DNA from: Macrostomum lignano
Taxonomy: Eukaryota
DNA length: 64,000 nucleotides
Direction of reading: 5' to 3'
Assembly (NCBI GenBank): GCA_002269645.1
Contig: NIVC01000218.1
Span: 390,407-454,406, forward strand
The position numbers and the translations under genes are program-made. Positions 22,845 through 39,058 of the stretch are shown here, in pieces. A model generated the notes under the pieces. The model had not been told where the DNA came from. It ran no database searches and saw only the letters and a list, made by a program, of their open reading frames with translations. The first letter of the stretch is position 1, and each line of letters starts with the position of its first letter.

Positions 22845-25800
22845 ATGGCAAATCGACAGGAAGGTCGGGAAGTTGCTGGTTGCAATCAAATTGCTCATGA
22901 TCAAATTTGGTGAGTATATATATGCAACGCAGTATGTCGGCACATACGCAAATATGGCAAAGAGGGATCCTGGACCTGAAGAACTCATTTTGGGAATTTA
23001 GATGCAGAAGGACAATTATTTTTTCTTTTTAATTATGGCGCGTGGAACTGAAGACAACAGCTTGAAGAGGGGCTGATTTGTATTTAGGTGAAAATTTGGC
23101 TATTAAGCCTCCCGTTATATTTCGTGTCGATCAACCGGTACGTGTCCGACAACTGACAACAATATAGCTACTTCCTGTCTGGTGGCGAACCTGAATCCCT
23201 CCTAGCCAGTGGCGTAGCCAGGAGGGGGGGGGCCGGGGGGGCCGCGGCCCACTCCCCCTAATCGCCTGGGAGGGTGGGGTTGGGCGCGGCGGGTACCAAA
23301 AACCATGAGGCAAATGATCGAGTGCCTGCGGCGCCAAAACGAGTGCCTGCGGCACCAAAAGTGGCAATGGCATGAGGCATGGCCTGCCAGGCCAACCCGC
23401 TCCCCCCCCCCCAATTAAAATTCCTGGCTACGCCACTGCTCCTAGCAAGAACATTTAGATATATCCTACCGGTGGCGGTAACAGATTGAAATGCCAGACG
23501 ATACTTAAACAGGTGGCTTTAAAAGACCACTGCATATATAATGCATGCACTGCATTGGACTGCATAATGAATAGGAAATATGCAATGCAAATACATATTA
23601 AAATCGTCGTCATCGAGTCAGCAAAGGCCTGACTAGTAAAAAAATTATTATTGAACGTTCTGTCCGCCTGCGTTTTTTAAAAATTAATTTGATTTAGTGA
23701 AAAATTACATCATATATTTGTATAACTATTCTTTATTGATATGTAGACTTCTGGTATAGCTTTATATCCATACATTTAAAGTCTTAGAAAATACTAAATC
23801 GTGTTTTGACCTTCTTACTATGTAATGTCTATAAAACAGGGGAAGGTTGAAAAGTCTAATACTCAGTCCATCTTTAAATACTTCGTTAGGTTTATGCAAA
23901 AAACATAATTGATGCAACAGTACGAGCTTGAAATTCCTTCAGAATTTTTTTCTGGAGCGGATATCAAACTATAACGAGCCGAACTTATTGCCTAATTTGC
24001 AGGAAGGATCATTGTACTAAAGAGGCCAGCTCGGCGAAACACTGGCACAAAGACTGGGGCTTTATGGCTCAATCGTACGAGGAGGTAATCCGATGACCAC
24101 TTCCTTGATTTGACCAGTTTGATGGTTGCTGCTATCTGGGTGGATGCTTGCTATTTAGGGGATGCTTGCTATCTGGGGGATGCTTGCTATCTGGGTGGAT
24201 GCTTGCTATCTGGGGGATGCTTGCTATCTGGGGGATGCTTGCTATCTAGGGGATGCTTGCTATCTGGGTGGATGCTTGCTATCTGGGGGATGCTTGCTAT
24301 CTGGGTGGATGCTTGCTATCTGGGGGATGCTTGCTATCTGGGTGGATGCTTGCAATCTGGGGGATGCTTGCTATCTGGGTGGATGCTTGCTATCTGGGGG
24401 ATGCTTGCTATCTGGGTGGATGCTTGCTATCTGGGGGGTGCTTGCTATCTGGGGATGCTTGCTATCTGGGTGATGTTTGCTATCTGGGGGATGCTTGCTA
24501 TCTGGGGGATGCTTGCTATCTGGGTGGATGCTTGCTATTTAGGGGATGCTTGCTATCTGGGGGATGCTTGCTATTTAGGGGATGCTTGCTATCTGGGCGA
24601 TGCTTGCTATCTGGGGGATGCTTGCTATCTGGGGGATGCTTGCTATCTGGGTGGATGCTTGCTATCTGGGGGATGCTTGCTATCTGGGTGGATGCTTGCT
24701 ATCTGGGGGATGCTTGCTATCTGGGTGGATGCTTGCTATCTGGGGGATGCTTGCTATCTGAGTGGATGCTTGCTATCTGGGGATGCTTGCTATCTGGGTG
24801 ATGTTTGCTATCTGGGGGATGCTTGCTATCTGGGGGATGCTTGCTATCTGGGTGGATGCTTGCTATTTAGGGGATGCTTGCTATCTGGGGGATGCTTGCT
24901 ATTTAGGGGATGCTTGCTATCTGGGCGATGCTTGCTATCTGGGGGATGCTTGCTATCTGGGGGATGCTTGCTATCTGGGTGGATGCTTGCTATCTGGGGG
25001 ATGCTTGCTATCTGGGTGGATGCTTGCTATCTGGGGGATGCTTGCTATCTGGGTGGATGCTTGCTATCTGGGGGATGCTTGCTATCTGAGTGGATGCTTG
25101 CTATCTGGGGGGTGCTTGCTATCTGGGTGGATGCTTGCTATCTGGGTGGATGCTTGCTATCTGGGGGATGCTTGCTATCTGGGGGATGCTTGCTATCTGG
25201 GTGGATGCTTGCTATCTGGGTGGATGCTTGCTATCTGGGTGGATGCTTGCTATCTGGGGGATGCTTGCTATCTGGGGATGCTTGCTATCTGGGGGATGCT
25301 TGCTATCTGGGTGGATGCTTGCTATCTGGGTGGATGCTTGCTATCTGGGTGGATGCTTGCTATTTAGGGGATGCTTTCTATCTGGGGGATGCTTGCTATT
25401 TAGGGGATGCTTGCTATCTGGGTGGATGCTTGCTATCTGGGTGGATGCTTGCTATCTGGGTGGATGCTTGCTATTTAGGGGATGCTTTCTATCTGGGGGA
25501 TGCTTGATATTTAGGGGATGCTTGCTATCTGGGGGATGCTTGCTATCTGGGGGATGCTTGCTATCTGGGTGGATGTTTGCTATCTGGGGGATGCTTGCTA
25601 TTTAGGGGATGCTTGCTATCTGGGGGATGCTTGCTATCTGGGTGGATGTTTGCTATCTGGGGGATGCTTGCTATCTGGGGGATGCTTGCTATCTGGGGGA
25701 TGCTTGCTATCTGGGGGATGCTTGCTATCTGGGGGATGCTTGCTTTTTAGGGGATGCTTGCTATCTGGGTGGATGCTTGCTATCTGGGGGATGCTTGCTA

Positions 25801-37800: not shown

Positions 37801-39058
37801 TTGCTATCTGGGGATGCTTGCTATCTGGGGGATGCTTGCTATCTGGGGATGCTTGCTATCTGAGGGATGCTTGCTATCTGAGGGATGCTTGCTATCTGAG
37901 GGATGCTTGCTATCTGGGGATGCTTGCTATCTGGGGGATGCTTGCTATCTGGGGGATGCTTGCTATCTGAGGGATGCTTGCTATCTGAGGGATGCTTGCT
38001 ATCTGAGGGATGCTTGCTATCTGAGGGATGCTTGCTATTAGGGTGCTTGCTATCTGGGGATGCTTGCTATCTGGGGATGCTTGCTATCTGGGGATGCTTG
38101 CTATCTGGGGATGCTTGCTATCTGGGGATGCTTGCTATCTGGGGATGCTTGCTATCTGGGTGCTTGCTATCTGGGGGATGCTTGCTATCTGGGGGATGCT
38201 TGCTATCTGGGGGATGCTTGCTATCTGGGGGATGCTTGCTATCTGGGGGATGCTTGCTATCTGGGGATGCTTGCTATCTGGGGGATGCTTGCTATCTGGG
38301 GGATGCTTGCTATCTGGGGGATGCTTGCTATCTGGGGGATGCTTGCTATCTCAGGGATGCTTGCGGGGGATGCTTGTATCTGATGGGATGCTTGATATTG
38401 TATTTGGGGGGATGCTTGCTGTTTTGGAGATGTCTTCTAAATAGGGGAATGTCTGTTATCTTTGAAAAGGCTTTATTTTGTGGTATTTTTGTTACTTTTA
38501 GAAAAAGATATTCATAGAAGACATCCTTGTGTGATGCAATTTTACTTGAATAAGTTGCCCTTGTATGTGCTCATTAGGAGTCAGCCGAATGAGTAGAATT
38601 GACGTCATCGCTGGTCGTGGGATAATGCGCCAGAGAGAAGTAAATTAGGAATAAGACGGGCCATTTGATCTGCCATTCGCTATTTTGTGCTGAAAATGTT
38701 TAGATTCCTGTCTACGTAGTGTATTTTTCCTATAAATCTAGCTTTTCTTAAGAAATGAAGCTTCCCTTGACTCAAACCTGCTCCATCGCAGGTGATCAAA
38801 GACGAACTGCCGACTCTGCGCGATTCCAGCCGGCCCAAGGCGGAACTGCCGGCCCACATGCAGGTGCCGCCGGTCACTCCGCTCAGAAACTATTTGCGAG
38901 TTGACCCGTCGCCGAAGCCGCCGCCAAGAACCACCAGCCAAGAGATTGGTTGGCGCTCCGGACAGCGCTCGCTAGCGTTGGACAAGTATGGCCGAGACGG
39001 ACGTCCGAGAGGCTCGCTGATTGGCCAGCTGAAGTGGCCGGCAGAGGCCATTAATTAA
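22845..39058 (+). CDS. CIMIP1: ciliary microtubule inner protein 1 (C20orf85-like), 137 aa; exons 22845-22909, 24003-24084, 38792-39058
   Basis: Spliced product: MANRQEGREVAGCNQIAHDQIW|KDHCTKEASSAKHWHKDWGFMAQSYEE|VIKDELPTLRDSSRPKAELPAHMQVPPVTPLRNYLRVDPSPKPPPRTTSQEIGWRS...QLKWPAEAIN. As recalled, it matches the C20orf85 motifs DxIW, W...WGF, PVTP..Y and P.TT...IGWRS. Junctions are canonical (TG|GTGAGT, TTTGCAG|, GAG|GTAATC, CATCGCAG|) with consistent phases 2 and 0. Confidence 0.8.
23207..23438. mobile_element. hAT-type MITE (232 bp) in CIMIP1 intron 1
   Basis: TIR CAGTGGCGTAGCCAGGA / TCCTGGCTACGCCACTG, with an 8-bp target-site duplication CTCCTAGC at 23199-23206 and 23439-23446. Confidence 0.9.
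24118..38430. repeat. ~14.3-kb satellite of 18-20-bp units (GGATGCTTGCTATCTGGG[G/GT]), ~750 units, inside CIMIP1 intron 2
   Basis: Continuous tandem array seen directly. It is G-rich on the sense strand, with diagnostic variant units recurring at kb-scale offsets. Confidence 0.98.

What the first reader, a model, noticed from the sequence alone, without database searches (positions are those of the whole stretch)
22845..39058. Intron gigantism: the 414-nt CIMIP1 coding sequence is split by a 14.7-kb intron that is almost pure satellite
Seen: exon 2 ends at 24084 and exon 3 starts at 38792, with the satellite filling ~24118-38430. The ORF track shows only exon 3, so automated annotation would probably truncate the gene. 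Established knowledge: satellite-filled giant introns are known in Drosophila Y-linked axonemal/sperm genes. Inference: a similar phenomenon in a ciliary microtubule inner protein gene of another lineage. The sense transcript would carry ~750 G4-5 runs (R-loop or G-quadruplex potential, though the loops are long), and the DNA has an AGATAG GATA-type site in every unit.
Basis: partly seen in the sequence, partly recalled or inferred. Interest (0 to 1): 0.75.

Follow-up and report, generated by a model that had tools for sequence, protein, structure and literature searches.

The report
Variable minisatellite in flatworm CIMIP1 intron
One copy of a small cilia gene in the flatworm Macrostomum lignano has a 14.7-kb intron that is almost entirely an 18-bp tandem repeat. 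The two sister copies in the same genome carry the same repeat at only 0.7 and 3.4 kb, so this is an ordinary fast-changing intronic minisatellite in a very repeat-rich genome, not giant-intron biology.

Summary
Exons 22845-22909, 24003-24084 and 38792-39058 give a 414-nt CDS and a 137-aa protein. It matches Pfam LLC1/CIMIP1 (E 2e-36) and solved CIMIP1 chains across both junctions. Intron 2 is 14,707 nt, and 97% of it is an 18-bp array (24130-38398, about 793 copies).

The window is Macrostomum lignano Mlig_3_7, contig NIVC01000218.1. GenBank already annotates this exact model (Mlig032137g2, PAA87751.1, 137 aa, span 16,214 bp), so the predicted truncation did not happen.

The same assembly holds two syntenic homeologs that encode the identical protein. 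Both carry the same array at the same site with the same splice sites, but intron 2 is 3,763 nt (182 copies) and 1,099 nt (37 copies). An older paralog has a repeat-free intron of about 0.9 kb at the same position.

Neighbouring minisatellites vary 8- to 23-fold between the copies, and at least four other introns in the window are mostly minisatellite. A second, inverted array of the same 18-mer at 55300-56081 shares a non-repeat tail, which points to a dispersed element.

"Intron gigantism" is defined by megabase introns, so that label fails. The G-run and GATA claims are partly right, and no canonical G4 motif exists. Interest is low.

The parts
22845..22909 (+). CIMIP1 exon 1 (ATG to W22, 65 nt), followed by donor GTGAGT
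   Evidence: Identical in the homeologs L001 and L003.
22910..24002 (+). Intron 1, 1,093 nt. It contains a MITE-like element of about 232 bp.
23207..23438 (.). MITE-like element with perfect 16-nt terminal inverted repeats (CAGTGGCGTAGCCAGG). Inside are two copies of the 21-mer CGAGTGCCTGCGGCRCCAAAA, which forms arrays elsewhere in the locus.
   Evidence: 2 matches against 0.02 expected
24003..24084 (+). CIMIP1 exon 2 (82 nt), followed by donor GTAATC
24085..38791 (+). Intron 2, 14,707 nt, GT...AG. The intron position is conserved in the older paralog and in the Lineus ortholog.
24130..38398 (+). 18-bp minisatellite array (consensus TTGCTATCTGGGGGATGC, 17-19-nt variants), about 793 copies, G-rich on the sense strand. 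It is a patchwork of variant domains and internal block duplications.
38399..38500 (+). Degenerate last units plus a non-repeat 'tail'. The tail is shared with the second array of the same family and is conserved in all three homeologs.
38792..39058 (+). CIMIP1 exon 3 (267 nt including TAA). The g2-private synonymous SNPs are at 38839 (G) and 39049 (C).
55185..56102 (-). Second, smaller array of the same 18-mer family (about 43 copies, more degenerate), in inverted orientation, with a homologous tail at 55185-55278. It lies between genes, upstream of the Sec24-like gene.

Best explanation
This is a hypervariable intronic minisatellite (VNTR) in the Macrostomum lignano ortholog of the ciliary microtubule inner protein CIMIP1.

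An element carrying an 18-bp tandem repeat and a short unique tail sat in intron 2 before the three subgenomes of the sequenced DV1 line (S, L1, L2) diverged. It starts 45 nt after the 5' splice site and ends 393 nt before the 3' splice site. Since then the array has changed length independently in each homeolog, probably by replication slippage and unequal exchange of multi-unit blocks. It now has about 37, 182 and 793 copies.

The copy in this window (g2) is the expanded one. Its extra length is largely made of unit variants that are rare or absent in the other two copies.

The splice signals lie outside the array and are identical in all copies. The intron is therefore expected to be removed normally, and the array is most likely neutral or nearly neutral cargo. 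Shown here: the anatomy, the homology, the three-copy comparison and the block structure. Inferred: the mutational mechanism, the direction of change (expansion in g2) and the lack of function.
For: - Gene identity and junctions.
- The window is identical to NIVC01000218.1:403251-439464 of the M. lignano Mlig_3_7 assembly, and the gene is annotated as a 137-aa product.
- All three copies are syntenic (acyl-CoA oxidase, then an LRR gene, then CIMIP1, then a 92-aa gene).
- Array sizes are 793, 182 and 37 copies. Intron 2 is 14,707, 3,763 and 1,099 nt.
- The splice sites and both array boundaries are the same in all three copies.
- All three proteins contain the identical 137-aa sequence. The CDS carries 6 differences, all synonymous, two private to each copy. 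The chance of 6 of 6 being synonymous is about 1.5e-4, taking every possible single-base change as equally likely. The unique part of the intron differs by 4-5%.
- The array has variant domains and exact internal duplications of 150-344 bp at offsets of 0.3-4.8 kb. Variants c, E, K, Y, S and N make up about 200 units in g2 and are rare or absent in g1 and g3.
- The older paralog has the same intron position with about 0.9 kb and no tandem repeat.
- Other arrays in the locus vary just as much: a 25-mer at 17 vs 137 copies, a 21-mer at 5 vs 120 vs 29, a 20-mer at 21 vs 20 vs 62.
- 40% of the window is tandem array, and 22% without this one.
- Three successive gaps between Sec24-like exons and one in the LRR gene are each mostly a different minisatellite.
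- Literature: tandem and simple repeats make up 15% of this genome and the annotation is guided by RNA-seq (PMC5730564). There are three subgenomes with about 2% SNP divergence but 32-36% divergence once indels are counted (PMC10733133).
Against: - No reads were available, so the length of the 14.3-kb array in a PacBio CLR/Canu assembly is unverified.
- PMC10733133 reports that 36% of the assembly length lies in scaffolds that are chimeric between subgenomes.
- Transcript support for the junction comes from an annotation pipeline in which reads multi-map among three near-identical copies. Splicing of this particular copy is therefore not shown.
- Neutrality is inferred from variability, not measured.
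- The direction of change (expansion in g2 rather than contraction in g1 and g3) rests on variant composition only.
Confidence: 0.8

Rival explanations
1. Functional intron gigantism. The long satellite intron would be a selected feature that delays or gates expression of an axonemal gene, as proposed for the Drosophila Y-loop genes.
For: The intron is 97% satellite and the host gene encodes an axonemal microtubule inner protein. The G-rich strand is the sense strand.
Against: - The size is 14.7 kb, against megabases in the defining cases.
- The length is not conserved even among homeologs that encode the identical protein: 1.1, 3.8 and 14.7 kb.
- The older paralog has no array.
- Neighbouring intergenic and intronic arrays vary just as much.
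- Macrostomorpha sperm are aflagellate, so no sperm-axoneme programme is expected.
Confidence: 0.04
2. Assembly artefact. The 14.3-kb length, or the join across the array, would come from assembling noisy long reads of three similar homeologous arrays.
For: Mlig_3_7 is a Canu assembly of PacBio CLR data from a genome that is known to be hard to assemble. 36% of the assembly length lies in chimeric scaffolds. The array shows 3% indels.
Against: - There is no N or gap.
- The array has an ordered, non-random domain structure. The 17-nt variant is clustered rather than scattered, as random homopolymer errors would be.
- The arrays of g1 and g2 are only about 90-92% identical in any register, so g2 is not g1 reads pasted in.
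- Both unique flanks align collinearly with the other two copies.
Confidence: 0.1
3. A harmful expansion. The G-rich sense-strand array would impede elongation or splicing of g2 through R-loops, long-loop G4s or cryptic splice sites. This homeolog would then be down-regulated and on the way to being lost after the genome duplication.
For: - GC skew across the array is +0.36 to +0.41, with 774 G-runs on the non-template strand.
- The sense strand carries 72 TTGCTATTTAG|G acceptor-like sites and 161 weak GGTGGA donor-like sites.
- Two other identical-protein copies give redundancy.
Against: The ORF, the splice sites and the promoter-proximal flank are intact. g2's two private CDS changes are both synonymous. 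There are no canonical G4 motifs and no strong donor motifs. There are no expression data.
Confidence: 0.12

Closest known systems
Human intronic VNTRs/minisatellites, for example the 25-bp ABCA7 VNTR with alleles up to about 10 kb (PMC6857246)
   Same: The unit is tens of bp and G/C-skewed, with many unit variants. Arrays reach several kb to more than 10 kb. Copy number differs widely between copies of the same locus. That the ABCA7 VNTR lies in an intron is from my own knowledge, not from the retrieved text.
   Different: Here the comparison is between three homeologous subgenomes within one inbred line, not between alleles in a population. No effect on splicing or phenotype is known.
Satellite-filled gigantic introns of the Drosophila Y-linked fertility genes kl-2, kl-3 and kl-5 (PMC6508621, PMC11207136)
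   Same: An intron made almost entirely of tandem repeat, in a gene for an axonemal component.
   Different: Those introns are two to three orders of magnitude larger (megabases), fill more than 99% of the locus, are made of simple 5-10-nt satellites and lie in Y heterochromatin. Their expression in spermatocytes needs dedicated RNA-binding proteins. Here the intron is 14.7 kb, its length is not conserved between homeologs, and the animal has aflagellate sperm.
Indel-dominated divergence of the S, L1 and L2 subgenomes of M. lignano (PMC10733133) and the species' high tandem-repeat content (PMC5730564)
   Same: The pattern is what those papers describe genome-wide: three copies, a few percent SNP divergence and very large length differences.
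   Different: Neither paper, as far as I searched it, describes this locus or attributes the indels to the turnover of minisatellite arrays inside introns.
CIMIP1 / C20orf85 / LLC1 (Pfam PF14945), a microtubule inner protein of ciliary doublets (PDB 9v10, 8otz, 8snb)
   Same: Full-length homology, the same length (136-137 aa), and conserved intron positions in the lophotrochozoan relatives tested.
   Different: Nothing notable in the protein. Only the gene's intron 2 differs.

Membership tests
CIMIP1 / LLC1 (PF14945) | Match to the Pfam model above its gathering score over nearly the whole profile | tested here: met
   125.6 bits against a cut-off of 27.3, profile positions 6-118 of 119
CIMIP1 / LLC1 (PF14945) | Full-length similarity to proteins seen inside doublet microtubules in solved structures | tested here: met
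   9v10_Ea and 8otz_P, E about 1e-21, residues 13-136 aligned to 14-136
CIMIP1 / LLC1 (PF14945) | Location in the lumen of axonemal doublets in this organism | not testable with these tools
   Needs cryo-EM, proteomics or localisation in M. lignano cilia
Intron gigantism (Drosophila Y-loop genes, dystrophin) | Introns of hundreds of kb to Mb, more than 1000 times typical size | tested here: not met
   14,707 nt against a species mean of 1.1-1.4 kb. Definitions.
Intron gigantism (Drosophila Y-loop genes, dystrophin) | More than 99% of the locus non-coding | tested here: not met
   414 of 16,214 nt are coding, so 97.4% is non-coding
Intron gigantism (Drosophila Y-loop genes, dystrophin) | Intron filled with tandem satellite DNA | tested here: met
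   97.0% of intron 2 is one 18-bp array
Intron gigantism (Drosophila Y-loop genes, dystrophin) | Large size conserved across related copies or species even though the sequence turns over | tested here: not met
   Homeologs have 1,099 and 3,763 nt. The paralog has about 0.9 kb and the Lineus ortholog about 1.9 kb.
Intron gigantism (Drosophila Y-loop genes, dystrophin) | [quoted passage not shown] | not testable with these tools
   No RNA data were available. The gene id was not found in the searched papers or supplements.
Intronic VNTR / minisatellite | Head-to-tail array of a 10-100-bp unit with internal variant units | tested here: met
   Period 18, 793 copies, 60 distinct unit variants
Intronic VNTR / minisatellite | Large copy-number differences between copies of the same locus | tested here: met
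   37, 182 and 793 copies at the same site in three homeologs. Variation between individuals was not tested.
Dispersed or transposon-borne minisatellite | The same array with the same non-repeat flank at unrelated loci | tested here: inconclusive
   One second locus (55185-56102, inverted) shares a tail of about 100 bp at 79% identity. The other flank shows no homology beyond the repeat. No terminal repeats or target-site duplication were found, and the whole genome could not be searched.

The most novel reading that the evidence does not exclude
One inbred animal carries a natural allelic series of a single intron: 1.1, 3.8 and 14.7 kb, or 37, 182 and 793 G-rich sense-strand repeats. The three homeologs encode the identical protein, share their splice sites and can be told apart by private synonymous SNPs. 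If array length measurably lowers or delays output of the g2 copy, then minisatellite expansion in introns would be a mechanism of expression divergence between homeologs, and of their eventual loss, in this recent polyploid. It would also be a clean system for measuring the cost of intron length and R-loop-prone repeats in vivo.
Probability: 0.12. Interest if true: 0.45.

Novelty: new member of a known kind. Interest (0 to 1): 0.2.

Why it matters
On its own it matters little. The gene model is already in GenBank, and the array is one more hypervariable minisatellite in a genome where tandem and simple repeats make up about 15% of the DNA.

Its modest value is as a worked example of how the three M. 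lignano subgenomes come to differ by about a third of their length while differing by only a few percent in SNPs. Minisatellite arrays, many of them inside introns, expand and contract independently in each copy. It also offers a possible internally controlled test of whether intron length or repeat content affects expression.

Tried and rejected
The same protein was reached through cluster members.
2. A megablast self-comparison of the array gave nothing with the chosen filters. It was replaced by a k-mer and diagonal analysis.
3. An Rfam scan of 20-42 kb found no RNA family, so there is no evidence for an intron-hosted structured RNA.
4. Searches for the gene id Mlig032137 in the paper library and in the supplements of two M. 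lignano papers found nothing, so there are no copy-specific expression data.
5. The Wasik et al. 2015 genome paper could not be retrieved.
6. A literature search for Macrostomum minisatellites found no description of this repeat.
7. A nested gene inside the intron was considered and rejected. All long ORFs there are frame-open translations of the repeat unit itself.
8. Canonical G-quadruplex motifs were considered and rejected: none with loops <=7 nt.
9. I ran no further search on the repeat-derived peptide to map the satellite genome-wide. The second array in the window already shows the family is dispersed.
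Full report
**Observation.** The finding's coordinates hold exactly.
- Joining 22845-22909, 24003-24084 and 38792-39058 gives 65+82+267 = 414 nt. Both introns have canonical GT...AG boundaries and the product is 137 aa.
- Intron 2 is 24085-38791, 14,707 nt.
- Tandem Repeats Finder reports a single array at 24130-38398: period 18, 793 copies, 90% matches, score 22,422. It covers 97.0% of the intron.
- GC skew is +0.36 to +0.41 across the array, so the sense strand is the G-rich one.
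- The mechanical ORF list shows only exon 3.
- The motif counts were overstated. The array has 774 runs of G>=3 but only 491 of G>=4. CTATCT (AGATAG on the opposite strand) occurs 645 times, in about 81% of units. No G-quadruplex motif with loops <=7 nt exists, because each unit has one G-run.

**Gene identity.**
- The 137-aa product matches Pfam LLC1 (PF14945) at E 2e-36 over profile positions 6-118 of 119.
- It aligns at residues 13-136 with the solved ciliary microtubule inner proteins 9v10_Ea (CIMIP1) and 8otz_P (bovine C20orf85 homolog) at E about 1e-21. The alignment runs through both exon junctions without a break.
- An older M. lignano paralog (54% identity) has introns at the same two positions, about 0.2 and 0.9 kb long, with no tandem repeat.
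- The ortholog of the nemertean Lineus longissimus also has the same three-exon structure, with introns of about 2.5 and 1.9 kb.
- Exons 2 and 3 therefore belong to one gene, and intron 2 is an old intron.

**Source and existing annotation.**
- The best database hit is 100% identical and comes from Macrostomum lignano.
- Window 12845-49058 is base-for-base identical to NIVC01000218.1:403251-439464 of assembly GCA_002269645.1, Mlig_3_7.
- That record already annotates the gene as BOX15_Mlig032137g2 (PAA87751.1), 137 aa, spanning 16,214 bp, which is exactly 22845-39058.
The annotation was built from genome-guided RNA-seq assemblies (PMC5730564).

**The decisive comparison.** The same assembly holds two more copies, g1 on NIVC01001750.1 and g3 on NIVC01000363.1.
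- Both sit in the same gene neighbourhood: acyl-CoA oxidase, an LRR gene, CIMIP1 and a 92-aa gene.
- All three contain the identical 137-aa sequence.
- All three have the same splice sites. The same array begins after the same ...TTTGACCAGTTTG and ends in the same degenerate tail.
- The array has 793 copies in g2, 182 in g1 and 37 in g3. Intron 2 is 14,707, 3,763 and 1,099 nt.
- The unique part of intron 2 differs by 4-5% between copies.
- The CDS carries six differences, two private to each copy and all synonymous. If every possible single-base change were equally likely, the chance of that is about 1.5e-4, so selection has kept the protein.
- This fits the published picture of the DV1 line. 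It has three homeologous subgenomes (S, L1, L2) that differ by about 2% in SNPs but by 32-36% once indels are counted (PMC10733133).

**Structure of the array.**
- It is not a uniform stutter. Splitting it into units gives 60 variants. The main ones are the 18-mer TTGCTATCTGGGGGATGC (262 units), a 19-mer with GGGTGGA (148), a 17-mer (79), a GAGGG variant (72) and a TTTAGGGG variant (50).
- The variants form domains. The promoter-proximal 4.5 kb uses the variants that also dominate g1 and g3. Blocks rich in the E, K, S and Y variants recur at about 28.7, 30.3, 32.9 and 33.3 kb. The last 3.5 kb is rich in the 17-mer.
- Exact internal duplications of 150-344 bp occur at offsets from 328 bp to 4.8 kb.
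- This is the pattern expected from repeated duplication of multi-unit blocks by unequal exchange or slippage.
- About 200 units belong to variants that are rare or absent in the other homeologs, so I infer expansion in g2 rather than loss in g1 and g3.

**Context: ordinary for this genome.**
- The window holds 31 tandem arrays, 14 of them at least 300 bp long. They cover 40% of the sequence, and 22% without this array.
- Other arrays in the locus differ between homeologs as much as this one. A 25-mer has 17 vs 137 copies. A 21-mer has 5 vs 120 vs 29. A 20-mer has 21 vs 20 vs 62. A 35-mer has 19 vs 8 vs 8.
- Other introns here are also mostly minisatellite. The minus-strand Sec24-like gene was identified from its zinc-finger, trunk, beta-sandwich, helical and gelsolin domains in consecutive exon ORFs.
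- Each of three successive gaps between its exons is mostly filled by a different array (47419-48239, 49150-49629, 50220-50541).
- The gap between two exons of the upstream LRR gene holds a 20-mer array at 20781-21204.
- Published figures agree: tandem and simple repeats make up 15% of the genome and the mean intron is 1.1-1.4 kb.
- The CIMIP1 array is unusual only in its absolute size.

**Origin.**
- The same 18-mer forms a second, more degenerate array of about 43 copies at 55300-56081, in the opposite orientation.
- About 100 bp of non-repeat sequence beyond its end aligns at 79% identity with the tail after the intronic array.
- This suggests that both descend from a dispersed element carrying the repeat. 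I found no terminal repeats or target duplication and could not search the whole genome, so a transposon origin remains an inference.
- Intron 1 holds a separate MITE-like element of about 232 bp with perfect 16-nt inverted ends. Its internal 21-mer is the unit of arrays at 5613-5810 and 43349-43460, and of a 2.5-kb array in g1. This shows how such arrays can be seeded.

**Comparison with known systems.**
- 'Intron gigantism' is used for megabase introns that make up more than 99% of a locus (PMC6508621). PMC11207136's abstract describes such introns as more than 1000 times typical size.
- This intron fails on size (about 10-13 times the mean), on non-coding share (97.4%) and on conservation of size. 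It shares only the satellite content.
- Macrostomorpha have aflagellate sperm (PMC4446793). CIMIP1 here must serve somatic motile cilia, so the sperm-gene parallel does not carry over.
- The closest known kind is the intronic VNTR, such as the 25-bp ABCA7 repeat with alleles of about 10 kb (PMC6857246).

**What remains open.**
- I had no reads, so the array length in this PacBio/Canu assembly is unverified. The assembly is known to contain chimeric scaffolds.
- Against an artefact: there are no gaps. The domain structure is ordered. The g1 and g2 arrays are only about 90-92% alike in any register. Both flanks are collinear with the other copies.
- I also had no copy-specific RNA data. It is therefore not shown that g2 itself is spliced across the long intron, or expressed at the same level as g1 and g3.
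- The sense strand carries 72 acceptor-like TTGCTATTTAG|G sites and 161 weak GGTGGA donor-like sites, but no strong donors.
- No Rfam family matches in or around the gene.

**Verdict.** The feature is real and was correctly located, and the gene model is correct and already annotated. It is best read as a neutral or nearly neutral, rapidly evolving minisatellite in an old intron. It expanded in one of three homeologs of a recent polyploid whose genome is full of such arrays. It is a new example of a known kind and of low interest. The one useful angle is that the three homeologs form a natural length series for testing the effects of intronic repeats on expression.

Noticed in passing
window 55185-56102: A second array of the same 18-mer family (about 43 copies, more degenerate) lies in inverted orientation. 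About 100 bp of non-repeat tail aligns at 79% identity with the 3' flank of the intronic array, which suggests a dispersed repeat-carrying element.
   Followed up: partly
window 23207-23438 (intron 1); arrays at 5613-5810 and 43349-43460; L001 22553-25109: A MITE-like element of about 232 bp has perfect 16-nt terminal inverted repeats. Its internal 21-mer (CGAGTGCCTGCGGCRCCAAAA) is the unit of separate arrays of 5 to 120 copies elsewhere in the locus, so a small transposon may seed minisatellites.
   Followed up: partly
window 46589-51911, minus strand: In a Sec24-like COPII gene, each of three successive gaps between exons is mostly filled by a different minisatellite: a 22-mer at 47419-48239, a 33-mer at 49150-49629 and a 22-mer at 50220-50541. 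Another array at 45902-46668 sits at its 3' side. Minisatellite-filled introns look routine here.
   Followed up: partly
window 20123-21531, minus strand; L003 7160-8436: In the upstream LRR gene, the gap between two exon ORFs holds a 20-mer array at 20781-21204 with 21 copies. The same array has 20 copies in g1's locus and 62 in g3's.
   Followed up: no
window 40106-40535 vs L001 16298-19708 and L003 13672-17912: A 25-mer array downstream of CIMIP1 has 17 copies here and 137 copies (3.4 kb) in the g1 locus. In the g3 locus it is split into several arrays. Which array has expanded differs from homeolog to homeolog.
   Followed up: partly
window 56175-59057: A 2.9-kb array of a 23-mer (TCTTTAATGTTTGACATGGTGGC, 126 copies, 83% matches) lies directly beside the second 18-mer array. 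It is the second largest array in the window.
   Followed up: no
window 22776-22844; L001 10001-10069; L003 10001-10075: The deposited products of g1 (160 aa, 'partial') and g3 (162 aa) carry different N-terminal extensions read from the 5' leader. g2 starts at the conserved ATG. The leader contains a T-run of variable length and a possible acceptor (tttccag|C) about 33-35 nt upstream of the ATG, so the extensions are probably annotation artefacts.
   Followed up: no
window 40761-41063, minus strand: A small cysteine-rich ORF begins with a hydrophobic, signal-like N-terminus. It overlaps the position of the annotated 92-aa gene downstream of CIMIP1, and a 92-aa gene is annotated in all three homeologous loci. 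It has no Pfam hit on record.
   Followed up: no
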